From Macrostomum lignano (taxonomy: Eukaryota), in the NCBI GenBank assembly GCA_002269645.1, contig NIVC01001520.1, positions 186,001 to 250,000 of the forward strand: a stretch of 64,000 bases of DNA. Direction: 5' to 3'. Below, piece by piece: positions 7,501-21,923 of this stretch (positions are counted from its first letter, which is position 1; each line of letters starts with the position of its first letter). The position numbers and the translations under genes are program-made. The notes below the pieces were generated by a model. The model did not search any database. It was not told the origin of the DNA and saw only the letters and a program-made list of their open reading frames with translations.

Positions 7501-9467
7501 TACTAATTACATAACGAGGCATTTAGTCTTAAAAATACAGTTACAGTTTTTCCTGCCGTTTAACCAAAATCACGTCAATCTTGCTTAGGTTTCTTTCATA
7601 GGTAAGTCGCATCTTTGGTCAAAAAGTAAATCAGAGGGGTTGCGCATGTATGATCCACTACAAGACTGCGGAGATACACAACTCCCTGAGCTGCTACCAT
7701 ATAACGGCAGGGTAAACTGGAGCTCAGTTAAATTAACCGCTCGTTTACGGTGGCTGTCTTTGTATGCTGACCCAAGCCGCTTATCAAGATTTGACTACAT
7801 TGATTAGATTGAGGTATGACTTGACTACTCGTAGACAAAAGATGTGACCAACGGTCAGCTAAGCCTTTCTATTTGGCCCTCGGGACTTTACAATAGCAAT
7901 CTGGCCCCCGCTAATGGTTTAGATGTCTTTTCAGCTCACTTCTCCCCCTCTCCCTCCCTTTTCCTTCTCTCTGTCCATCTCACTCTTTGTCTCGTTTTTC
8001 CGTCTCTTCTCTCCCCCTCTACCCTATCTCTCTCTCCCTTTCTCTCGCCCGTTAACGAGTGAGTCTGTGAGTCTGTGAGTTACTCACAGATACTAGAAAA
8101 CTAGATGGGCCACTCAGCACATTTGCGTGTAAGCTACTTTCAGTTCAGTAGTAAGTTAAACAGAAGCATTTTTATGTATTTTTAAAGTCAAGGCTCTTTT
8201 ATTGTATTTTTAAAGTCAAGGCTCTTTTATTGGTATTTTATTGTATTTTTAAAGTCAAGGCTCTTTTATTGGCATTTTAATGTATTTTTAAAGTCAAGGC
8301 TCTTTTATTGGCATTTTAATGTATTTTTAAAGTCAAGGCTCTTTTATTGGCATTTTAATGTATTTTTAAAGTCAAGGCTCTTTTATTGGCATTTTAATGT
8401 ATTTTTAAAGTCAAGGCTCTTTTATTGGCATTTTAATGTATTTTTAAAGTCAAGGCTCTTTTATTGGTATTTTATTGTATTTTTAAAGTCAAGGCTCTTT
8501 TATTGGCATTTTAATGTATTTTTAAAGTCAAGGCTCTTTTATTGGCATTTTAATGTATTTTTAAAGTTAAGGCTCTTTTATTGGCATTTTAATGTATTTT
8601 TAAAGCCAAGGCTCTTTTATTGGCATTTTAATGTATTTTTAAAGTCAAGGCTCTTTTATTGGCATTTTAATGTATTTTTAAAGTCAAGGCTCTTTTATTG
8701 GCATTTTAATGTATTTTTAAAGTCAAGGCTCTTTTATTGGCATTTTAATGTATTTTTAAAGTCAAGGTTCTTTTATTGGCATTTTAATGTATTTTTAAAG
8801 TCAAGGTTCTTTTATTGGCATTTTAATGTATTTTTAAAGTCAAGGTTCTTTTATTGGCTCTTAGCCCCTCCAACCGCGCCTTTCCTCACTACCCCCCGCA
8901 ACGCCCCAATTTTTAATGCCTTTCTCGGAATTACAGCCTAAAGCTGCCATGTACATTTCAGTGGTTACTCGTAATGTACATTATTGCTCAACCAATTAGC
9001 AAGTTGTTTACGCCTGCAAGCTTGGGCTTCTAAACTTATCAAAGTGATTTCAGCTGCCTTTATTTTGGCCTCCTGTAGCGAAAGATTAGTGTCGTACTCA
9101 CCTGTACATAGGTGGAGATGGCCTCCAGATCGGGCAGCAAGTCTTTCACATCGGAGGCGCTGCTGTCGCACTCGACAATAAAATCGTGACTATTAGCCAC
9201 TCGCTTAGACGGCCGACTCTCGATGTGCTCCAGATTGACTTGGTGCTTTTTAAAGATTTCCAGAGCGGCACTGAGAGCGCCAACTCGTTCGGGCATGCTG
9301 AATACAATTGACACGCGTTTCAGAGTTTCCAGGCCGCTGACATAATAGCCCTGCGTGCCGGCTCTCCTGCCCTTGCCAAAGCCATCGTTGCCTTCTCCGT
9401 TAGCGGCTGGCGCCTTTTTACCGCTAGAATTATTATTATTACTACCGCTGGTCACGTGAGCGTCCAT
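4548..9467 (-). CDS. PAH: Phenylalanine-4-hydroxylase (~477 aa, 5 exons)
   Basis: Exons 9467-9102 (ACT domain, [11 protein letters not shown]), 7380-7141 ([22 protein letters not shown]), 6201-5942 ([28 protein letters not shown]), 5253-4852 ([34 protein letters not shown]), 4713-4548 ([12 protein letters not shown]). All phases join; residues are PAH-like rather than TH- or TPH-like. Confidence 0.95.
5290..5760. repeat. Degenerate CTGACA-rich tandem repeat in PAH intron 3
   Basis: Recurring AACCTGACA / TCTGACAGAATCTGACA; boundaries approximate. Confidence 0.6.
6252..7045. repeat. 39-40-bp minisatellite (~20 copies) in PAH intron 2
   Basis: Unit AATCAGTGAGCTACTGCAGACCATTCTCATACACCTGACT. Confidence 0.95.
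8170..8858. repeat. 39-bp AT-rich minisatellite in PAH intron 1
   Basis: Unit TATTTTTAAAGTCAAGGCTCTTTTATTGGCATTTTAATG. Confidence 0.95.
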
Positions 9468-9876
9468 AATGCTACTATAAAAGTAGTTGGTGCTGATTTG
9501 TTAGCATGAATATTAATGGTTAAAATAGGTGCATATACTACGTTTTCAAAGAAATGGATGCTTGAATATTTTTTGTTTAAATGGGGTTCTTACTAGCTAG
9601 ATGCAAACTGTGTTGAGGAAGTGTTACTAAAACTTACTCTAATTACCCTTACTCCCCCAGCTACCCGACACTGCATAAGACCTACACCTTCAAAGTATAT
9701 AGATATTTAGAAAAAAAGAAACAGCAAACGACTTTACAGAGAAAAAACAAGCAAAATATATTACTACTGATAACAGTACTAAATGTCCAATTTTACACTA
9801 AATTGCGCAACAAATCCAGTAAACCATGGAAGCAATCGCATGATGGAACAATGCTAAACATCTGTCTACTAGACGA

Positions 9877-11644
9877 TTAGATAAACTTGTACACTAGGTC
9901 GACCTCGCTGTCCACCGTTTGAACTTCCAGTCGTACAACGCAGCGCATGAGTAGTGACAGCATCTCCTCAGCGTAGCCAATCAGAAATGCGTAGCGCATG
10001 CACACAATTCTAGGATTTGTGTCCATCCTGTCTCGCTGCTTTAGTAGCAGAGCAACTCGAATTGTATTGCCCTGCAAAGGATAAGGGAATACCACTGTCA
10101 TAACTGGAAACTTATGCTGATGCTGAAATTGCAGTTCCTTTGTTTATAAAATCTACCCTTTGCTCGATGTCCTTGTTTTTTTACCGGTTATCCATGCTCA
10201 CCTATCACCACCTCTAGCACCAGTTCGCTAATCACCACCTGAAATCTCTGTTAGCCAATCATCCCACCTGTGTGATCCATGTTAGCCAATCACCACCTGT
10301 GTGATCCCTGTTCGCTAATCACACATGTGATCCCTGTTAGCCAATCACCACCTGCTATCACTGTTTGCTAATCACACATGTGATCCCTGTTAGCCAATCA
10401 CCACCTGTGATCCCTGTTAGCCAATCACACATGTGATCCCTGTTAGCCAATCACACATGTGATCCCTGTTAGCCAATAACCACCTGTGATCCCTGTTAGC
10501 CAATCACTACCTGCTATCCCTGTTTGCTAATCACACCTGTGATCCCTGTTAGCCAATCACCATGTGTTATCCGTGGTCGCTAATAATCACCACCTGCTAT
10601 CCCTGTTCGCTAATCACACCTGTGATCCCTGTTAGCCAATCACCATGTGTTATCCGTGGTCGCTAATAATCACCACCTGCTATCCCTGTTCGCTAATCAC
10701 ACCTGTGATCCCTGTTAGCCAATCACCACCTGTGATCCCTGTTAGTCAATCACCACGTGTTATCCCTGTTCGCTAATAATCACCACCTGCTATCCCTGTT
10801 CGCTAATCACACCTGTGATCCCTGTTAGCCAATCACCACCTGTGATCCCTGTTAGCCAATCACCATGTGTTATCCGTGGTCGCTAATAATCACCACCTGC
10901 TATCCCTGTTCGCTAATCACACCTGTGATCCCTGTTAGCCAATCACCATGTGTTATCCGTGGTCGCTAATAATCACCACCTGCTATCCCTGTTCGCTAAT
11001 CACACCTGTGATCCCTGTTAGCCAATCACCATGTGTTATCCGTGGTCGCTAATAATCACCACCTGCTATCCCTGTTCGCTAATCACACCTGTGATCCCTG
11101 TTAGCCAATCACCACCTGTGATCCCTGTTAGTCAATCACCACGTGTTATCCCTGTTCGCTAATAATCACCACCTGTTATCCCTGTTCGCTAATAATCACC
11201 GCCTGTTATCCCTGTGCGCTAATAATCACCAGTCATCCCCATGCAGTCCTGAATAGACGTGCCAATTACCTGTCGCTTAATAACGATGCACTCGGAGGCC
11301 AGCATCTCGGGAAAGGTGCCCCGCAGCAGAATGCGAATTAATTGATCCTGATAATTAGTAGTGCCAGCGTCAAAGCTCTGACTTTCGCCAAGCAAGCCGG
11401 CCGTATTCCAGCTCTGCCAGGCCTTCTGCGCCCCAATCTGCTCGGGATATTTGGCCTGCTCGTAGGTGATCGGCCTGGACCGATCGCGCGTACCTTTTAG
11501 CACGGCAGCCCGACGATTCTTCGGCGGTATTCGCCGATAAGGTTTTGGTAGCTCGCCGAATTCCCATAATCGATTGGCGCTGGTGTGCAAGGCCGATAGC
11601 TGCTGCGCCCGTTGCAGCAAGGGCGGCCGAAACGAGGAGAGTAA
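9877..11644 (-). CDS. MRPS24: Mitochondrial ribosomal protein S24 (uS3m); no genomic ATG in the first visible exon
   Basis: Exons 11644-11270 and 10071-9877, joined in phase 0. Motifs KNRRAA, RPITYEQA, KAWQSWNT, RGTFP, YAFLIGYAEEMLS, VRLEVQTV and LVYKFI* match MRPS24. Confidence 0.9.
10200..11230. repeat. Compound 25-31-bp minisatellite filling the MRPS24 intron
   Basis: Alternating GTTAGCCAATCACCACCTGTGATCCCT and GTTCGCTAATCACACCTGTGATCCCT units with higher-order order. Confidence 0.95.
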
Positions 11645-12644
11645 CTGAAAAAACGGTATAATTTAATAAAAAATAACAAGCGTATTCCTATAGACTACTG
11701 CTAATTATGTAATACTAGTAGACAATTTGCAAATAGCTAGAAAATTCAACGATAGAAAAAATGAAAAAAACGAAAACCTAATATAAAAAAACAATAATTT
11801 AGACAATTTAGACTTTTATTAAAAATTTACAGATAAATTTAGGCAATAAAATATATATACGTTACAGTGCCAAACCACACTACTGGCCAATAATCAATCT
11901 GGTTATCGGTAACATGACAGGGCGCAAAGCGGAATTTTATTTAGTCACTAGGAGGACGCTCGAAGTCTGAGAAAGCAATGTCTTCCGGGAAAAGAACATT
12001 CTTCGACAAGTATTTAAAATACGCAACGAATATAAGTACACTTGTAGTATGAAACGAGTCGAATTAAAATGACACGAATCATAAAGACTCGCATTGCACT
12101 CTGCAATAGAGATCAAATTCAATATCAGACACGGCAGGTGGAGAAAACAAATGAAAGCGACGAAATACATACTTTTGTAACCTCTAAACAACGAGCGAAT
12201 CTGTTAACACCATATGGTCCAAGCTGATTGGCCGTACAGGCATGGGGAAGGGTTTACTGACTTCTGATTGGTCGGAAGACAAATAAAACGTACTTAATGA
12301 CCCCTTAGCGATAGATTAAAAACACGATGAAAATCGGCGAACAACAGGCAAACAGACTTGCATGTGCAATGCAACAGCACAATTGTAACACAAAGACTAT
12401 GAAAGAACGAAAGTTGATTTCCAATTTAAACATATGCAAGTCACGTCATTCAAAAAGCAGCCATTAACAGACCAAGTCGATCAAGCTCAGTTGAAAGAAT
12501 CATAAAAGAGCATATTCCACTCATAGCGAAGCCTTCGCTGGGAGCAATACAAAAAGCTATATATATACATGATAAGAAGAAAAACAACTGGGGATTTCAT
12601 CCCCATTTTGGGAAAATTGACAAATTCAGAATTAAAAATTAGTT

Positions 12645-15018
12645 TCAGACACGATCCGGCACTACCAACAGGATTCTGTTGATCAGGTACAGGGAAGGCT
12701 TCATCAGTGGCAGCGGAATAGGCGCTCTGAAATTATAAAGTAGTTATGATAACAGATGTTAAAAATATTTCGCTACTTATGCTACTATTAGTAAGCGAAA
12801 GTTGTTCTTCTGACTTTTACGGTCACGTGACATAAAAAAACTTATTTAAAATGCAATATAAAAGTGCCAAAACCTGAGTGCGTGTCCGCTCACCTGTACA
12901 GTCGATAATATTGCGCGCACAATGCGCTCACAATGCAGATCGGATAGCAGATTGACAGGAAACAGATCGACAGGCCGTACCAGGGCGACAGCCATGTGAT
13001 AAGAGCCATAGGCAGACCGAATGCAAGAAAATATGGCCAGTGATGCTCGATGTACATGGCGCGACTTTGGAATACCATGCCTGTCGGGCAGCATACAAGT
13101 GAAATGGATAGGCTTTCCGCAAACTTTCAGTTTCTATCTCCCATTTGATGCCATTTTTGACATCCCCTGTCTCCTATCTGATGCCATTTTTGACATCCCC
13201 AATCTTCCATTTGATGCCATTTTTGACATCCTCTATCTCCAATCTGATGCCATTTTTGACATCTCCTATCTCTTATCTGATGCCATTTTTGACATCTCCT
13301 ATCTCTGATCTGATGCCATTTTTGACATCCCCTATCTCTGATCTGATGCCATTCTGATGCCATTTTTGACATCCTCTATCTCTGATCTGATGCCATTTTT
13401 GACATCCTCTATCTCTGATCTGATGCCATTCTGATGCCATTTTTGACATCCCCTATCTCTGATCTGATGCCATTTTTGACATCCCCTATCTCTGATCTGA
13501 TGCCATTCTGATGCCATTTTTGACATCCCAATCTTGGGATCTCTGGGCTTTGAACTCACCCCTGCTAGACCAGCGATAGTCAAACACGTACAGAGAGTAG
13601 AGCAGGCACATGTGGCACAGGTAAAGCAGCTCGGACACAAGCGGCACGGGGATTTGCCTGGCCAATTTAGCCTGACACAGAAACAGCAGTTCAACTAATA
13701 GGCCGTAGGCTTGATCAGCCAAAACCTTGCCAATCCGTTTGCCGTCTCCGGTGCGCTGCTCTCGCTTAGCAACAATATAAACCAGCTGGCCGACATCTTT
13801 AAATGAGAAATAATTCACTACTTCCAATACGACCACTACTGGCAGAATCCACAGCGCATTAAATAGCCAGGTAATTATTGGCACAAGGTAGTCGCTAACC
13901 CAGGGACCTTGAAACCGGTCGGCCGTCCACAGTAGCACCGGCAGCACCATCAGGTTAAATACCAGCACACTGCACTGTCATTTATATGTTGAACATAAAA
14001 ATGAAATTTTGTCAAGAGTTAATGCTTGTGATTGACCGGAAGTGGGCGGGGCACAGAACTATAACAGTTTAAACAAATCGACAAATACAAATAAGTGGCC
14101 AGGTTAGAAAACTTACGCCAAGAACTACTGCGTTCCAAAACCACGTGCGCTTGATTGTGCCGATAAGGGACAGTTTACTGGAATACAATTTACAGCGGGG
14201 TTGCTATTGAACCGACCGGAGCGTGTCACAGGTTATGCAGCACTAGGGTGCGCAGAAATGTAGAAAAAAATGCGCTAAAATGCTGAATTTGAAATGTTAA
14301 ACGATTCTGGTCTTGCCTTCAAGGCAAACGAAAGCTTCCATAGACAACTGAAGGACAAACCGCTAAATGACTCGCGAAACAGGTCATTGTATTTCTTGAG
14401 CAGTCATTATCCACACTCCCATGAACTCTTGAGCATCTGTCGTTACCTGCACTCTCGTGAACCCTTGAGCATTGGTCATTACCCGCACTCCCATGAACTC
14501 TTGAGCATTGGTCATTATCATTACTCGCACTCCCATGAACTCGTGAACATTGGTCATTACCCGCACTCTCACGAACTCTTGAGCATTGGTCATTACCCGC
14601 ACTCCCATGAACTCTTGAGCATTGGTCATTACCCGCACTCCCATGAACTCTTGAGCATTGGTCATTACCCGCACTCCCATGAACTCGTGAGCATTGGTCA
14701 TTACCCGCACTCCCACGAACTCTTTGAGTATTTGTCATTGCCTGCAACCATCTACTGATGATTGGCACAAGTATAAAAAATAAAACACCCTACTAATTAA
14801 CTAAACATATTAACTTACTCCTTTGTCTCCTTGGCCTGTATGTAGGATCTCTGCGATCTAGGATCCATCTGGCTTGCTCTGTAAGCCTCTATGCGGGCAT
14901 TGAGCGAGCGAAGCTGCACCAAGCCAGTAAAACAGTCGCGCAGGCCAGCAGCAAATCCATACAAATAATGAAGAGATGACAACTCTGCTGCTGTACTGGG
15001 ACTACTGGAGCTTTGCAT
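12645..15018 (-). CDS. EI24: EI24 autophagy-associated transmembrane protein (5 exons)
   Basis: Exons 15018-14819, 14177-14117, 13974-13560, 13080-12894, 12726-12645; phases join. Motifs GFAAGLRDCFTG, LFNALWILP, KVLADQAY, LLYSLYVFDYRW, IEHHWPYFLAFGLP. Confidence 0.9.
13135..13530. repeat. 33-bp minisatellite in EI24 intron 3
   Basis: Unit CTGATGCCATTTTTGACATCCCCTATCTCTGAT. Confidence 0.95.
14400..14730. repeat. 36-bp minisatellite in EI24 intron 1
   Basis: Unit CATTACCCGCACTCCCATGAACTCTTGAGCATTGGT. Confidence 0.95.
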
Positions 15019-15479
15019 TGCAGTAAAATTTCCCTATGTACAGTTAAACTTTTCAGTCAGACTGTATAGGTGCTGGTCAGGCACAATATTATTCCACAGT
15101 ATAGATTGAAGCACTTTAGCATGTGCCTAGATTATTTATCTGAAACTGAATGTTTTCAGCTTAGTATAAATAAAGGCTGAATATGAATCAAAATATACTA
15201 CATGTCGATTTTATTAATGCAAAAAAGTTAAAATAAGCCAAATACTTGTTTTAATGCCTTCATATAAACAAAATCTAATGTGTTACATTTAAATATAAAT
15301 GATAATATTTTAACACTAGCTACTTAAAATAAATGGGACTTAGAAGACTTAAAAGATCATACAGCCCTTGAGTATTGAGTTTATGGATACATAAGGATAA
15401 AGGAATAGATATGAATGAATATAAATATTTTCAAAGCTTTTGTCAAAACTGTTAAGACTCCATAGTCACAGAAAATTCT

Positions 15480-15690
15480 AGCATAGAAAATGGTCTAGCA
15501 CTGCATTATCTAGCACAGTGCAGCATAGAAAATGGTCTAGCACTGCATTATCTAGCACAGTGCAGAATAGAAAATGGTCTAGCACTGCATTATCTAGCAC
15601 AGTGCAGCATAGAAAATGGTCTAGCACTGCATTATCTAGCACAGTGCAGCATAGAAAGTGGTCCAACTCTATACTACCCAGTGCAGATAG
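15480..15690. repeat. 42-bp minisatellite upstream of EI24
   Basis: Unit GCATAGAAAATGGTCTAGCACTGCATTATCTAGCACAGTGCA, ~4.5 copies. Confidence 0.9.
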
Positions 15691-16499
15691 CACAGTGAAG
15701 CATATACAAATTTGTAAGAAATAAAGCATATCTTGCACAATACCAAGAAGAAAAATGAATTATGCAAATCTTTATAAAATGCATTTTTCTGTAAAAAAAT
15801 TGTTTTTAGATTTATGCTGTGGCTTTTGGCCTAGCCACAAGGGGAAGGCAGCTATCCCCCCTTTCCTAGCCCCCCTCTCCTTTCCCTTAAATCCACCCTT
15901 GTAAGTTAGGCCTAAACTACCTTTTTGATTATGATAAGATTTAAGTCCCTAGGTTTAGAGATTTTTATGCTATATAAACATTGTTTGAGCTAAAATTAAG
16001 GCATAGGGCTAGGCCTAGGTCATAGATACTAGAACAACAAGATGTCACTCATGAAAAAATTGTGAAAAATTTAGTGTCTACTTTTTTGTAATAGACACAT
16101 TTGGGACATGCCCCCAAATTTTTAGCGCATGCTAAAATAAAAAAATATTTTCTTTCCTCACTGCCTGGCCGTGGTTGGCATCTTTGTCTTGTGTGGAATG
16201 TGTGTATATACAAAGTATAGCATATGAGCATAAGAATCATAAACAAGATTTAGATCCCCTCTCAGTAGGAAGAGTGAAATCATTGATCCGCAGAAGACAA
16301 ACTAGTGTGTACATAGGTCCCCTAATAAGAGAGAAAGGCTGATGCCAGGCTTCCCTTCTTACCATATGTAATCTTTTTAATTTTCCAGGAATTGATATCC
16401 ATGCCATTTTTCTATCACCCTGTGAGCTTAAAGTCTGTATATATCATTATAGATGTACCATATTGCCTTAAAAACCTGCAAAATTCTCTCAAAAGAACC

Positions 16500-18160
16500 A
16501 CATGGCTTTTGACAATAATAAGCTTGCAAAATGGCTACATGTAGAAGAATGTAACAAAGCAGATAGCAACCATTCTTTTTGATTGGCAAATCAATTGAGT
16601 GACACACATATTACCTTGCCACTTGGCTAGAAGATGCATGTCTCAATTGCAGCTCAAGTACTTAGCCATTTGATATCTACTAGTATTCAAACACTTGTGC
16701 ACCATTGGGAAATGGAGCTCAGCACATTGCATATAGCTGAGTTTTTACAGCGAGTGAATAGCATGTTCAATATGCTGAACTCCATGCACATGTTTGACAA
16801 AGGCTTCATGAAACCAATCTCTAATGAGTCCCTTTCTGCCCAAATAAATGAGCTGTGCAAGGCTAAAGACTTTCTAGAGAGCTTGGGGGTTTTCCCCAGG
16901 AATGGCAAAGCAGAAAAGTCCTTGAAGATGAAATTACAAGAGGCCTAGTGCTTTTCAGCTGCAGCGATATGCAAGCTATCAACTGCACTGATCAATGATA
17001 AAGGCTTTGACTTCATCTGTACTCGCAGGCTGACTCAAGATAATGTAGAAGTGAGTGAGCATATAAATCAATATGAGTAATAATGGGTATTAATTACATT
17101 GGAATATAATCACTTGCATTGTATCACATATCAATGCATTCCAAAATCTCTTTAGCATCATCAGAGGCTGAAATGTTTTTAATGAGAAGCCCAAACTCAT
17201 AGCATTTATTGGAGCATTGAGATCTATGCAGTGGCATAGCCAGGGGGGGGGGGGGGGCTGGGGGGCCATCCCATTCCATCCCCTTCCAATCACCTAGGTG
17301 AGGTGAGGGTAGGGTTGGGTGTAGCGGGTACCAAAAACCATGAAGCAATTGAGTGTCTGTAGCACTAAAATGAGTGCCTGCAGTACTAAAGTGAGTGCCT
17401 GCAGTGCCAAAATGAGTTCCTATAGCACTAGAAGTGGCAATGACATAAGGCATAGCCAGCCAGGCCAACCCACCCCCCCCCCAATTGAAATTCCTGGCTA
17501 TGCCACTGGATCCATGGCAGCAAGCAGACTCAATTGCCCTGATTCTGCAGCGTGGAATTGTGAAGATGACAGATGCACCACTGCTGTTACAATTGGTCTT
17601 GAGTCTGCTTCTGTTGAGTCTGCTTCAGCAAATGTCAGCTGAGTATCTCAAACTGGCTCTTAAAAAACCAGGGTCCAATTGAAGGCATTGCAGCCTGCAT
17701 ATAATATAGATATGATTCTCACTGTAGCCACCAAGTATATAGGCAGCTTTGTGCTCAAGAGCAGCTATGTCCTTAACTATTGTGCATGCAAAGAGCTGCT
17801 GACTGGCACTGGCCTTTACGTGTGCATTTGATTTTGAAGAACAAGCTACACTTACATACAATTAGTGGATTGATGCAACCATCAGTTGCAGCCTTTAAAA
17901 CATTTTCCAAAGTGGAAGCTTTCTTTGTGGTGCAAGTTAAGACCTACATTTTATATCTAAAAGTAGCTGCGCTGATTGTTGAGAAGCTTTTTTCTAATGA
18001 AATCCACTTTCCAACATGCAGTTCACACTCCAATAAAGCACATTGCAGTATCTTCACAGCATTTGTTTGCTTATAGTTGTACCACTGGTGTTGCAAAAAG
18101 ATACAGAGACTGTGAATTGCTGCCATCAAGTGATGTCCAACTCAAAAAGCAAAAAATCAA
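16500..18160 (+). mobile_element. Decayed P-element/THAP9-like transposase
   Basis: Translated pieces LSDTHITLP..KMHVSIAAQVLSH, AEFLQRVNSMFNMLNS, FICTRRLTQDNVE|NLFSIIRG, KYIGSFVLK..CACKELL and GLMQPS follow P-transposase motif order. Contains stops and an inserted MITE; boundaries approximate. Confidence 0.75.
17229..17508. mobile_element. 280-bp MITE (hAT-like) inserted in the P-element relic
   Basis: TIR CAGTGGCATAGCCAGG / CCTGGCTATGCCACTG; 8-bp TSD GATCTATG / GATCCATG (one mismatch). Confidence 0.85.
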
Positions 18161-19682
18161 CTAATTTTTGTTTTAAGATTTCCATTAAGTATTCAGGCAA
18201 TTAAGCATTTTTTGCTTACTTGAAAATGTTGAGCCCTTTAATTTGTTACTTTGTATTGCAGAAGTAATTAAAAAAACTCTTACTTAATCTTTTTAGTTTT
18301 GAAATTTGTGTATATAGGCCTAAGGCCTAATATAGTATAGTATAGCCTGTATAGGTGCAGTCCTATTAGGCCTTACCAATTTTTTCTTTTAAGCCTCATT
18401 TTTATGCCTTAAAGTTAAAATGAGAAAATAACTTTGATTAAGTCATAGGCTATAACAAATCCATTGTTCCATTTGCTAATATGCAATATGTTCCAATATT
18501 AAAAATGATCAGAAGTTAAAAATTAGGCCTATTGACCAGATTCACTACCACCACAAGCTAAATGTGTTGGAAACCCTGTACTCTGTACATCAAACAGTTA
18601 AAGCCTACCCTAAATGTACAACTGACAGGAAAGGTGGCTAGTACTATTCTTTGAACTTTTGACTATTCTCTATGGCTAGACCTACCTACTTAAACCTGTT
18701 TCAAAACTCTTGGCCCATACTTTCATTTTATTACCTTCCAATTACAAAATACTGTCACCCGACAATGCTGCAAATTGCACATGTGAATAAAAATAAAATA
18801 TTTTCGTCATAATATTCGTCATAATACTTTCGTCAACAATATCAATTGAAAAAAATGCACATGTTTGCAATCATCTTCTTCGTTCTTTTTTTTTGCGTTC
18901 CTTATTTAAGCGAAATAGCATTCCTAAAATTTACTTTGAGATAGCCAATCGCTACGACAACATCTTCATGATTCAGTTGTCAAAAACTCTGATTCAATTA
19001 AGCCGATGACAAAGTGAGCGAAATAAGTGACTTTTGAAAGTTAAGTCCTGAATGATGAATATCCACTTTTAACCTTTAAAACTAGTCAGTAATTCTATCG
19101 ATAGTCTGAATTCAATTCTTATTCAAATGATTATTTTTCTTTATATTGAGTTTTATATTCAGCTGGACTGCCTTTGACTCATTTTTACTAAATTCAGTAT
19201 ATTTTCTGTTTTAATTCAGAAAATAAATTTCAAAGTTTCTGTTTTCTATGAAGTATGCTCTAGTGCCTGCCGATAAAAGAAAGTTTTTAGCCTTGTAAAT
19301 CGTTCACACTATTTACCAACATGAATTTGAGTACAGTGCAGGTTTTACTTTTTTAGCTTGATTTAGTAATGCCACTAAAGACAAAGTAAATCAATATTGA
19401 ACTCACAGCATATTGTGTTTTTGACAGAAGCCAAGGGGGCCATGAGCCAAAAAAGGGCCATACTTTTTGGCCTGTAACTATTCAAGGTATATTTTTAATG
19501 TTAGAATTTATTTGCTTGGTATAGCTTGCCCCCCCCCTCAAAAAGTTTCTAGATCCACCCCTGATTTTTTATATGTTGCTTAGTTCTTATGTTTTATTAT
19601 TGTACTTGCTCCACTGGTTTTTAACCAAGCTTATTATTCTTTCTATAGATACTACATTTATATTATATTAATATATTATATA

Positions 19683-19950
19683 CTCAGCAACATCGAAAAG
19701 TCGCCATCACAGAATATTCTGTCTGTAGTTGCCATTTTTGAGAGTTCAGGTAAGTCTCAATCTTTGCAAGTGATGCAACTTAGCTACGCCCCGGCAGACT
19801 TGAGTTGAGGAATGAAGTGGGGGGAGCGGTGTGTGAGGGATGGACAGATTAAAGCTACCCCGATAAACTTTTTTGTATGTTTTAATTCAGAATAGTCCAA
19901 GAGAAATTGCCTACTGGGGCAAAGAGTGGCAACTTTTCAATGTTGCTGAG
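19683..19950. mobile_element. Tc1/mariner-type MITE
   Basis: ~25-bp TIR CTCAGCAACATCGAAAAGTCGCCA / TGGCAACTTTTCAATGTTGCTGAG, flanked by TA on both sides. Confidence 0.7.
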
Positions 19951-20169
19951 TATATAGTTCTACTGTAGCTACAGATATGGCTATGGGAAGTTATGGATAG
20001 GATATATAGGTTTTTTGGCAAAGCATATGGATATAGATTATGGTTACAGGAACACATAATTCCTATATCTAGTTCCCATATCTAGTAATACTACTCAATC
20101 AAGAATTGAAAGACTATCAAAGTTATTAATTTGATAAAGTTAAGATAGGCCTAGTAGAAATAAATGAAG

Positions 20170-20780
20170 GTTGCTAGTTTCAAAGTGAGGGGAACTCATA
20201 AGTCCTGGAAGTTAGGCCTAGGACTCAAGCATCAATAGATTGTCAATGCCATGTTGTGGTTAGGTGGTAAGAGCTAAAGTCAAGATAATTTTTTTTATTT
20301 TCAAAGGGGAGCTCTTAAGTCCCTACTTCCTGCATGGATTTAGGGACTTAGCAATAGGGTTTTAATACTACATACATGTTGTGGTAATTAAATGGTAGGG
20401 GGCTAATGTTAAGATTAGAGCCTAGAATGTTTTCACTTTCAAGGGGAGCTCCTAAATTCCTAGGGTTGGGGACTAGGATAGGGTTGGGATGTTGGAGACT
20501 GAATTTAAGATAAATAGCCTAAAATAGGCCCTATTTTCATTTTCAATGTAAGAGAAGCTCTTAAGTCATTACAATTAAGGACTCAAGCAAAAAAGACAGA
20601 AATGTTTTTACACTATATGCACATTGAGGTTGGATTAAAATAGGGGAAGTTAAAGTTAGGCCCCCCTACGATATGTTTTCACTTTCAATACAAAGGGAGC
20701 TCTCAAGTCCCTAGGGTTAGGGACTCAAACAACATTTTGACACTATATGCACATTATGGTTGGAATGGTAGGGGTTTAAG
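20170..20780. repeat. Old, degenerate ~125-bp tandem repeat (~5 copies)
   Basis: Recurring TTTCAA..GGGGAGCTCTTAAGTCCCTA..AGGGACTCAAGCA block. Confidence 0.55.
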
Positions 20781-20931
20781 TTAAGATAAATGAAGACAAT
20801 GGGGAAGCCACTTAGCATCTGCCACTATCAAAGAAGGTAGATTGCAAAGGAGGCTTCTTGGAAGCCAACTGATAAGTAGGCTATCGCCATTGTAAATTTT
20901 GGTAAGAATTAGAGATTTTGTTACTTTAGTT

Positions 20932-21412
20932 CAGGGGTCGGCAAACTTTTTACCTCAAGGGCCAGATAAATAATCTAAACCATTGATGCGGGCCAGATGA
21001 GAGTAGAAAGGAGTGGGAATGGGGGAGCAAGAAGAATAAAGAGGAGATAACAGATGACAGAATAGAGGAAAGGTGAAAGTCGATGGGAGGAGAGGAGGGA
21101 GAGAGGAGAGCAGTTCACTAAGAGGAGAGAGAGGAGAGTAGAAAGAAGAGGAGAGAGAATAGAGGAGAGAAGAGGAGAGAGGAGAGAAGAGGAGATGAGA
21201 AGAGAGAAGAGAGAAAAGGAGATGAGAAGAGAGAGAAGAGAAAATGAGATGAAAGGAGAGAGGAAAGAAGAGAAAAAAGAAAAAAGAGATAAGAAAACTG
21301 AGAAGCGAAATAAACCTTGGATCGCTATCATGAAGTTTCAAAAGACCTGAGGGCCGGATAGAGAGGCTTTGCGGGCCGCATGTGGCCCATGGGCCGAGTA
21401 TGCCAAACTCTG
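20932..21412 (+). mobile_element. hAT (Charlie/Buster-like) MITE with GA-rich interior
   Basis: Starts CAGGGGTCGGCAAAC, degenerate right TIR, perfect 8-bp TSD CTTTAGTT. Confidence 0.85.
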
Positions 21413-21923
21413 CTTTAGTTACTTAAACAATATAAAAAAGATAAAGGGGAGAGAAAGGAGAGAGAAAAGAGGGAGAAAATAATAAGAAGGGAACAGAAAA
21501 GAGAGGAGAGGGGAGAGAAAAGAGATAAGATGGCAGAGAAAAGAGAAGAAAATAGACAAGATGGAAAAAGGGATAAAATAGAAGACATTTGCCCTTGGCC
21601 TCACCTATGTGGTCCCTGCAGACAAACAGTTTTAGAAAAAGGCTTTTTGTCTACCTAGCAAACAAACTGTCAATGGACAAATGAACTAGAAACCAAATAG
21701 TTGTAGTACAATAGTATGTTCTATTGACATCACCAATACCAAATTGTAATGGTACTTGTTGTTCTACCTTCTAAATGATCTCAACTCATAGCTATTACCA
21801 ATATTGTTATAGTGTTCAATTCTACTTTTTTAGCAATGTATTAGCATAACTAGTATAGTTTTAGTAGTATCTTAATATAATTCTATAGTGTCTTAGTATA
21901 TTTCTATAGGCCTAAGCAGTATA

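What the first reader, a model, noticed from the sequence alone, without database searches (positions are those of the whole stretch)
11600..11670. MRPS24 has no genomic start codon; its acceptor is in frame for the spliced-leader AUG
Seen: the reading frame is closed by an in-frame TAA at 11665-11663 with no ATG below it. A strong acceptor TTTTTTCAG| lies at 11645, and the exon starts in phase 0 with TTA CTC TCC TCG TTT CGG. Adding one Met gives MLLSSFRPPLLQRAQQLSALHTSA, a typical Arg/Ser/Leu-rich, acid-free mitochondrial presequence. Established: flatworm spliced leaders end in a conserved AUG that can act as the initiator Met. Inference: translation and mitochondrial targeting of this essential gene depend on SL trans-splicing. 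I found no convincing upstream ATG-plus-phase-0-donor exon but cannot exclude one.
Basis: partly seen in the sequence, partly recalled or inferred. Interest (0 to 1): 0.75.

Follow-up and report, generated by a model that had tools for sequence, protein, structure and literature searches.

The report
MRPS24 borrows the spliced-leader start codon
In the flatworm Macrostomum lignano the gene for mitochondrial ribosomal protein S24 has no start codon of its own and almost certainly takes it from the AUG at the end of the trans-spliced leader, a mechanism known in flatworms since 2006, so this is a correct but ordinary example.

Summary
The window is Macrostomum lignano (Mlig_3_7, contig NIVC01001520.1). 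MRPS24/uS3m lies on the minus strand in two exons, 11644-11270 and 10071-9877. An in-frame TAA (11665-11663) closes the frame. The acceptor TTTTTTCAG| ends at 11645 and exon 1 starts in phase 0. The only in-frame ATG is codon 115, inside the conserved domain.

The published M. lignano spliced leader ends in ATG followed by a GTAAG donor, and the acceptor fits the published trans-acceptor motif [T/C]TNCAG. GenBank's protein (BOX15_Mlig010485g2, "partial", 189 aa) starts at the first base after the AG. That annotation pipeline cuts gene models at peaks of mapped SL reads, so this is indirect RNA evidence.

The roughly 1 kb up to the EI24 stop holds no GT[AG]AG donor and no credible ATG-plus-phase-0-donor exon. 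With the SL Met, the N-terminus is already as long as in 57 homologues, and it aligns with the cleaved mammalian transit peptide.

I could not see SL-junction reads directly. The mechanism is already known (Cheng et al. 2006, with examples from Schistosoma and Echinococcus). This is a new instance of a known kind and of low interest.

The parts
11645..11653 (-). 3' splice acceptor TTTTTTCAG|, the proposed SL trans-splice site. The AG is at 11646-11645.
   Evidence: Read. It matches the published M. lignano trans-acceptor motif [T/C]TNCAG (PMC8629364). It is one of only two such sites in the 1.1 kb scanned.
11663..11665 (-). In-frame TAA that closes the MRPS24 reading frame 7 codons upstream of the exon.
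   Evidence: Translation reads ...LVIFY*IIPFFQ|LLSSF...
11270..11644 (-). MRPS24 exon 1, 125 codons in phase 0 at both ends, with no usable ATG. It encodes the presequence-like N-terminus and the first half of the MRP-S24 domain.
   Evidence: GenBank's partial CDS (PAA61952.1 / PAA66932.1) starts at 11644.
10072..11269 (-). Intron 1 (GTAATT...TTTGCAG), almost entirely filled by a tandem repeat with periods of about 83, 110 and 193 nt.
9877..10071 (-). MRPS24 exon 2, 64 codons plus the TAA stop at 9879-9877.
11654..12644 (-). Intergenic stretch between the EI24 stop and the acceptor, a candidate intercistronic region or outron. It contains no GT[AG]AG donor. AATAAA hexamers lie at 11941-11936 and 11820-11815.
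   Evidence: The two genome copies differ here by only one SNP and one 2-bp indel.
12645..12726 (-). Last exon of the upstream same-strand gene EI24 (PF07264), with its TGA stop at 12647-12645.

Best explanation
MRPS24 (uS3m) of Macrostomum lignano is made from an mRNA whose 5' end is created by spliced-leader trans-splicing at the acceptor TTTTTTCAG| (AG at 11646-11645). The 35-nt SL ends in AUG. Joined to exon 1 in phase 0, that AUG is the first AUG of the mRNA and the only one that opens the full reading frame. The product is M+LLSSFRPPLLQRAQQLSALHTSA..., 190 aa in all.

The first 42 or so residues correspond to the mitochondrial transit peptide that is removed in mammalian uS3m. The SL therefore supplies the initiator of a cleavable targeting sequence.

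The gene sits about 1 kb downstream of the stop codon of EI24, on the same strand. Candidate EI24 poly(A) signals lie 170-300 nt before the acceptor. MRPS24 is therefore probably a downstream cistron of an operon-like unit that trans-splicing resolves.

What is shown: the gene structure, the absence of a usable genomic AUG, the frame compatibility with the published SL, and a public gene model that starts at the acceptor. What is inferred: that SL reads map to this site, that ribosomes initiate at the SL AUG, mitochondrial import, and operon membership.
For: 1. A stop lies 7 codons upstream, the acceptor is in phase 0, the only in-frame ATG is codon 115, and the first genomic ATG in the exon is out of frame.

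2. The organism and its SL: the protein is 100% identical to M. lignano BOX15_Mlig010485g2. The SL ends in ATG and is followed by a GTAAG donor. The trans-acceptor motif is [T/C]TNCAG. About 30-39% of M. lignano genes are SL trans-spliced (PMC8629364; PMC5730564).

3. The GenBank CDS is 5'-partial, and its first codon is the first codon after the AG in both genome copies. The six codons upstream are all sense codons, so a transcript model reaching further 5' would have given a longer partial ORF. The model must therefore begin within 0-2 nt of the splice site. The pipeline that made it (TBONE) cuts transcriptional units at peaks of mapped SL-containing reads.

4. There is no alternative 5' exon. 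In the 999 nt up to the EI24 stop there are 30 combinations of an ATG with a phase-0 GT. The best donor scores 4.5, against 7.0 and 8.0 for the real donors next door. No GT[AG]AG occurs at all, although about 65% of M. lignano donors carry that motif.

5. Nothing is missing at the N-terminus. With the SL Met, 60 residues precede the conserved (L/I)TYE motif. The median is 52 (interquartile range 49-70) in 57 Met-initiated homologues. Mature 132-aa mammalian chains in the PDB begin at the position aligned with M. lignano residue 42-43.

6. The mechanism has precedent. The flatworm SL AUG works as an initiator. It is in frame in 28% of S. mansoni trans-spliced transcripts and required by more than 40 cDNAs (Cheng et al. 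2006, as summarised in PMC9851317). The same was found in Echinococcus, including for nuclear-encoded mitochondrial proteins (PMC3510090). [quoted passage not shown]
Against: - No read or cDNA joining the SL to TTACTCTCC was seen. The evidence for trans-splicing at this site is the shape of the public annotation, not the reads themselves.
- No supplement or paper mentions Mlig010485 or this gene.
- The two genome copies are nearly identical, so there is no comparative test of the acceptor.
- The crude amphipathicity of the N-terminus is not above shuffled controls.
- Parasitic flatworms often share acceptors between cis- and trans-splicing (PMC12582326), so a minor cis-spliced isoform from a distant exon cannot be excluded.
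- Three relatives have a genomic ATG: Mesocestoides corti and two unidentified Logan contigs. The arrangement is therefore not conserved.
Confidence: 0.85

Rival explanations
1. An unannotated cis-spliced 5' exon with a genomic ATG and a phase-0 donor, lying in the intergenic kilobase or further upstream, supplies the start codon. In that case the acceptor at 11645 is an ordinary intron acceptor.
For: Flatworm acceptors can serve both cis- and trans-splicing (PMC12582326). There are 30 combinations of an ATG with a phase-0 GT in the 999 nt upstream. The annotation could have missed a short first exon.
Against: The best candidate donor scores 4.5, against 7.0-8.0 for the neighbouring real donors, and no GT[AG]AG is present in the whole interval. 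The better-scoring candidates further upstream lie inside EI24 exons, in frames EI24 does not use, or inside tandem repeats. In my four-exon reconstruction the EI24 donors are in phases 2, 1 and 2, so none joins in frame. The N-terminus is already at or above typical length without extra residues. The public gene model ends at the acceptor.
Confidence: 0.07
2. Translation starts at a genomic codon inside exon 1. This would be either a near-cognate codon (TTG or CTG at codons 10-11, TTG at codon 20) or the internal ATG at codon 115, and it would not depend on the SL AUG.
For: In-frame TTG and CTG codons exist early in the exon. Non-AUG initiation is documented in other SL-using taxa (PMC9851317).
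Against: On a trans-spliced mRNA the SL AUG comes first and is in frame. On an unspliced RNA the first AUG in the exon is out of frame, at 11567. Starting at codon 115 would delete more than half of the Pfam domain, which spans residues 46-190.
Confidence: 0.04
3. The locus is a non-functional copy or an assembly artefact that has lost its true 5' end.
For: The DV1 line carries a duplicated chromosome and the assembly is repeat-rich (PMC8629364).
Against: Two separate contigs give the same sequence. The ORF is intact with a strong Pfam hit, and the splice sites are canonical. No other M. lignano MRPS24 was found in the protein search.
Confidence: 0.02

Closest known systems
SL-AUG-initiated mRNAs of Schistosoma (Cheng, Cohen, Ndegwa & Davis 2006, J Biol Chem 281:733)
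   Same: The SL ends in AUG. The acceptor places that AUG in frame with the main ORF. No genomic AUG can give the full, orthologue-length N-terminus. [quoted passage not shown]
   Different: The species and SL sequence differ: here it is a free-living macrostomid with a 35-nt SL. For this gene there is no cDNA or translation assay, whereas the schistosome cases have both. I could not read the primary paper.
Echinococcus granulosus SL-bearing transcripts that need the SL AUG (PMC3510090)
   Same: [quoted passage not shown] The list marks nuclear-encoded mitochondrial proteins as in frame with the SL AUG (a putative NADH-ubiquinone oxidoreductase subunit and COX6B).
   Different: Those cases rest on full-length SL-cDNA clones. 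MRPS24 is not among the examples I saw. The tapeworm relative Mesocestoides corti has genomic ATGs for MRPS24.
Downstream genes of M. lignano operons (Ustyantsev & Berezikov 2021, PMC8629364)
   Same: The upstream gene is on the same strand. The distance from the upstream gene's likely 3' end to the acceptor is well under the 1 kb threshold. The acceptor fits [T/C]TNCAG.
   Different: Operon membership was not shown here. I did not see the transcriptional-unit track, and the suffix 'g2' in the locus tag may number copies rather than positions in a unit.
slORFs in nematodes, trypanosomes and Oikopleura (slORFfinder, PMC9851317)
   Same: In both, a start codon inside the SL opens a reading frame on the recipient mRNA.
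   Different: Those are mostly non-canonical NUG starts and often create new or alternative ORFs. Here a canonical AUG starts the main conserved ORF.

Membership tests
Flatworm mRNAs initiated at the SL 3'-terminal AUG | The organism's spliced leader ends in AUG immediately before the SL donor site. | tested here: met
   The M. lignano SL is CGGTCTCTTACTGCGAAGACTCAATTTATTGCATG, followed by GTAAG (PMC8629364). No SL RNA gene lies in the window itself.
Flatworm mRNAs initiated at the SL 3'-terminal AUG | The mRNA is SL trans-spliced at the acceptor in question. | tested here: inconclusive
   The evidence is indirect. GenBank's 5'-partial CDS starts at the first base after the AG in both copies. 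The annotation pipeline cuts models at SL-read peaks, and the acceptor fits the trans motif. No reads or cDNA were available.
Flatworm mRNAs initiated at the SL 3'-terminal AUG | The SL AUG is in frame with the main ORF, with no stop in between. | tested here: met
   SL plus exon 1 translates as MLLSSFRPPLLQRAQQLSALHTSANRLWEF....
Flatworm mRNAs initiated at the SL 3'-terminal AUG | No genomic in-frame AUG can give the orthologue-length N-terminus, so the SL AUG is required. | tested here: met
   A TAA lies 7 codons upstream, and the first in-frame ATG is codon 115. No credible upstream exon was found. N-terminal length is 60 residues against a median of 52 in 57 homologues.
Flatworm mRNAs initiated at the SL 3'-terminal AUG | Ribosomes initiate at the SL AUG in vivo. 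| not testable with these tools
   This needs ribosome profiling or a reporter assay.
MRPS24 / uS3m (Pfam PF14955) | Significant match to the family profile over its full length, and to solved mitoribosome chains. | tested here: met
   PF14955 at E=1.3e-38, covering profile positions 3-135 of 135. 3j9m_AC uS3m at E=9e-20. 162 homologues in the representative library.
Cleavable mitochondrial presequence | An N-terminal stretch that is positively charged, free of acidic residues, amphipathic and removed on import. | tested here: inconclusive
   The first 28 residues have no D or E and a net charge of +3. Residues 1-42 align with the segment absent from the mature 132-aa mammalian chains. The helical hydrophobic moment is not above shuffled controls. 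TargetP and MitoFates were not available.
M. lignano operon, downstream cistron | Same-strand neighbours less than 1 kb apart (repeat-adjusted), with the downstream gene SL trans-spliced. | tested here: inconclusive
   The EI24 stop lies 1 kb upstream on the same strand, and AATAAA hexamers lie 170-300 nt before the acceptor. Trans-splicing itself is inferred, and the poly(A) site was not mapped.

The most novel reading that the evidence does not exclude
MRPS24 in the M. lignano lineage has lost its own start codon, whereas three relatives still have a genomic ATG (two of them a few bases after an acceptor). Synthesis of this mitoribosomal protein would then be obligatorily gated by SL trans-splicing. 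If conserved genes of this kind are numerous, they would make trans-splicing irreversible in evolution, and they would tie mitochondrial translation capacity to trans-splicing efficiency. That link could matter in neoblasts, where 85% of the specific genes are trans-spliced (PMC8629364).
Probability: 0.12. Interest if true: 0.45.

Novelty: new member of a known kind. Interest (0 to 1): 0.2.

Why it matters
- **For annotation.** Hundreds of M. lignano proteins are deposited as "partial" because the pipeline trims the SL. For genes like this one the true protein is the deposited sequence plus one Met, and it is complete.
- **For biology.** This is a clean, single-gene example in a transgenesis-capable flatworm, in which an indispensable organellar protein cannot be made without trans-splicing. 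That makes it a convenient reporter for testing SL-AUG initiation in vivo.
- **What it does not change.** Initiation at the flatworm SL AUG has been established since 2006, with dozens of cases.

Tried and rejected
- **Direct RNA evidence.** The 90% cluster of the protein holds only the NCBI entry, so no transcript-derived protein from M. lignano is in the collection. No supplement or paper mentions Mlig010485 or MRPS24 in this species.
- **Comparison of genome copies.** The second copy (L002) is virtually identical, so it gives no information.
- **Operon proof through EI24's locus tag.** A protein search with the EI24 exon returned nothing. My splice reconstruction gives 292 aa, not the annotated 314 aa, so an exact look-up was impossible. 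I therefore did not rely on the 'g2' suffix, which may number copies within a 95% cluster.
- **Cis fusion from EI24 donors.** Rejected, because the donor phases are 2, 1 and 2. This holds only under my reconstruction.
- **Amphipathic-helix statistic for the presequence.** Not significant.
- **Survey of other genes in the window for the same feature.** Two long ORFs were not on record as genes, so I abandoned the survey.
- **Other scans.** Rfam and tRNA scans of the window found nothing, and there is no SL RNA gene in the window.
- **Cheng et al. 2006.** The paper could not be read. It is cited through papers that summarise it.
- **Source organisms of two Logan contigs.** DRR639838 and SRR26958231 could not be identified.

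Full report
**What is there.** The window is Macrostomum lignano, assembly Mlig_3_7 (GCA_002269645.1), contig NIVC01001520.1, read in reverse. Locus L001 matches it base for base, and L001 position 10001 is window position 11644.

On the minus strand lies a two-exon gene. Exon 1 is 11644-11270 (375 nt, 125 codons) and ends at CAG|GTAATT. Intron 1 is 11269-10072 and is filled by a tandem repeat. Exon 2 is 10071-9877, preceded by TCCTTTGCAG| and ending in TAA. The 189-codon product matches Pfam PF14955 (MRP-S24) at E=1.3e-38 over profile positions 3-135 of 135. It also matches human uS3m in mitoribosome structures (3j9m chain AC, E=9e-20).

- The frame is closed by TAA at 11665-11663.
- The six codons between the stop and the exon are ATT ATA CCG TTT TTT CAG.
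- The AG of TTTTTTCAG is at 11646-11645, and the exon opens with TTA CTC TCC TCG TTT CGG.
- Exon 1 contains only two ATGs. One is out of frame at 11567. The other is in frame at codon 115, which would leave 76 residues and remove more than half of the domain.
- An unspliced RNA therefore cannot give MRPS24 from any AUG.

**The spliced leader.** M. lignano has one described SL, CGGTCTCTTACTGCGAAGACTCAATTTATTGCATG. In the 109-nt SL RNA gene it is followed by the donor GTAAG. The motif enriched at trans-splice acceptors is [T/C]TNCAG. Between 30% and 39% of genes are trans-spliced (PMC8629364; PMC5730564).

The site TTTCAG| at 11645 fits that motif. It is one of only two such sites in the 1.1 kb from the EI24 stop into exon 1. 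Joining the SL to 11644 puts its terminal ATG in frame and gives MLLSSFRPPLLQRAQQLSALHTSANRLWEF.... No SL RNA gene lies in the window.

**Indirect RNA evidence.** The GenBank protein for this locus is 'hypothetical protein BOX15_Mlig010485g2, partial', 189 aa. It is identical to exon 1 plus exon 2 without a Met, and it is present on two contigs (PAA61952.1, PAA66932.1). Its CDS begins at the first base after the AG in both copies.

The six codons upstream are sense codons. A transcript model reaching further 5' would therefore have produced a longer 5'-partial ORF, so the model must start within 0-2 nt of the splice site.

The authors' pipeline (TBONE) trims the SL from SL-containing reads, maps them, and cuts transcriptional units at the resulting peaks. 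ORFs are then called with TransDecoder (PMC5730564). A model that starts exactly at an acceptor is what an SL-read peak would produce. This is an inference from the annotation, not a view of the reads.

**Search for a rival 5' exon.** I looked for an upstream exon in several ways.

- Between the EI24 stop (TGA 12647-12645) and the acceptor there are 17 ATGs and 74 GTs. They give 30 combinations of an ATG with a phase-0 GT and no stop in between.
- The best donor among them scores 4.5 on a simple consensus scale. The MRPS24 intron donor scores 7.0 and the last EI24 donor scores 8.0.
- No GT[AG]AG occurs in the whole interval, although that motif is present at about 65% of M. lignano donors.
- Higher-scoring candidates further upstream lie in EI24 exons, in frames EI24 does not use, or inside tandem repeats.
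- In my reconstruction of EI24 the donors are in phases 2, 1 and 2, so none joins the phase-0 acceptor in frame. That reconstruction gives 292 aa rather than the annotated 314 aa, so this point is provisional.

**Is an N-terminal piece missing?** A full HMMER scan of 1.84 billion representative proteins found 162 homologues. I aligned the Met-initiated homologues of 150-235 aa. In the 57 of them that keep the motif, the number of residues before the conserved (L/I)TYE motif has a median of 52 and an interquartile range of 49-70. M. lignano with the SL Met has 60.

The 'LHTSA' motif that precedes the mature part in many homologues is at residues 20-24. PDB entries that give the mature 132-aa mammalian chain (6nu2_AC, 5aj4_AC) begin at the position aligned with M. 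lignano residue 42-43. Everything upstream of that position therefore corresponds to the cleaved transit peptide.

In composition, the first 28 residues have no Asp or Glu and a net charge of +3. The helical hydrophobic moment is no better than in shuffled sequences. 'Typical presequence' is therefore plausible but not demonstrated.

**Relatives.**

- The closest named relative is Mesocestoides corti, at 48% identity. Its gene has two in-frame genomic ATGs.
- An unidentified Logan contig (DRR639838) has ATG CTT CTT TCG CGT TTT CCT (MLLSRFP...) four bases after a polypyrimidine-CACAG acceptor.
- Another unidentified Logan contig (SRR26958231) has its ATG 13 bases after TCTACAG.

The start of the protein sits at the same place in these relatives, but the ATG is genomic. 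Among the sequences seen, the absence of an ATG is particular to M. lignano. The resemblance between MLLSRF and (M)LLSSF is suggestive, but such openings are common in presequences.

**Context.** EI24 (PF07264) lies upstream on the same strand. AATAAA hexamers at 11941-11936 and 11820-11815 lie 170-300 nt before the acceptor. Downstream on the same strand lies an aromatic amino-acid hydroxylase (ACT plus Biopterin_H domains). Its annotated CDS is also 5'-partial and begins next to an AATCAG| site about 385 nt after the MRPS24 stop.

By the published criterion (same strand, under 1 kb, downstream gene trans-spliced) this looks like a three-gene operon. That remains inferred.

**Comparison with what is known.**

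- All reported flatworm SLs end in AUG (PMC12582326).
- Cheng et al. 2006 showed that the SL AUG serves as initiator. It is in frame in 28% of S. mansoni trans-spliced transcripts and required by more than 40 cDNAs (as summarised in PMC9851317).
- In Echinococcus, 143 of 187 SL-bearing clusters were full length using the SL ATG. The use of the SL AUG was conserved for 10 of 15 orthologues of S. japonicum SL-AUG genes that came from SL libraries. Mitochondrial proteins are among the in-frame cases (PMC3510090).

The present case is therefore a new member of a known kind. No paper names this gene.

**Verdict.** Interest is low, at 0.2. The finding is correct and tidy, useful for annotation and as a possible in vivo reporter, but a specialist would expect it.

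Noticed in passing
window 9465-9495, minus strand: The downstream hydroxylase gene (ACT plus Biopterin_H domains) is also annotated 5'-partial, beginning next to AATCAG| (AG at 9494-9493). If the SL is added there, its AUG is out of frame with the genomic start (ATG 9467-9465). It would open a 6-codon upstream ORF (MHQLLL, then a stop) that ends a few bases before the real ATG. In this gene the SL AUG would hinder translation rather than help it.
   Followed up: partly
window 10183-11230; 8197-8858; 13134-13529; 14403-14746; 15480-15663: Introns of all three neighbouring genes are largely made of long tandem arrays. The periods are about 83/110/193 nt in the MRPS24 intron, 39 nt x 17 copies at 98% identity in the hydroxylase gene, 33/77 nt and 36 nt in EI24, and 42 nt upstream of EI24. 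The length differences between the two genome copies appear to lie mainly in such repeat-rich parts.
   Followed up: partly
L002 (NIVC01001985.1) against window 1-21644: A second contig carries the same EI24-MRPS24-hydroxylase block. In the 1.2 kb aligned it differs by only one SNP and one 2-bp indel. This agrees with the duplicated large chromosome of the DV1 line described in PMC8629364.
   Followed up: partly
window 12645-15018, minus strand (EI24): The annotated EI24 product is 314 aa. The best canonical four-exon reconstruction from the sequence gives 292 aa, and I found no 66-nt extra exon with canonical sites. The annotated model may use a non-obvious exon or a repeat-derived segment. 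A protein search with its largest exon returned nothing, although the gene is on record.
   Followed up: partly
L003 548-1087 (Logan DRR639838): The gene caller extended this MRPS24 relative upstream through a CT-rich polypyrimidine tract (MPLSLSLSLSFVLFLPLHSS...) from a GTG. The real start is most likely the ATG at 608, four bases after an acceptor-like CACAG. The ORF has no intron at the position where M. lignano has one.
   Followed up: no
window 15019-21644: No gene is called in the 6.6 kb upstream of EI24 in the public annotation. I did not examine the stretch beyond the tandem repeat at 15480-15663.
   Followed up: no
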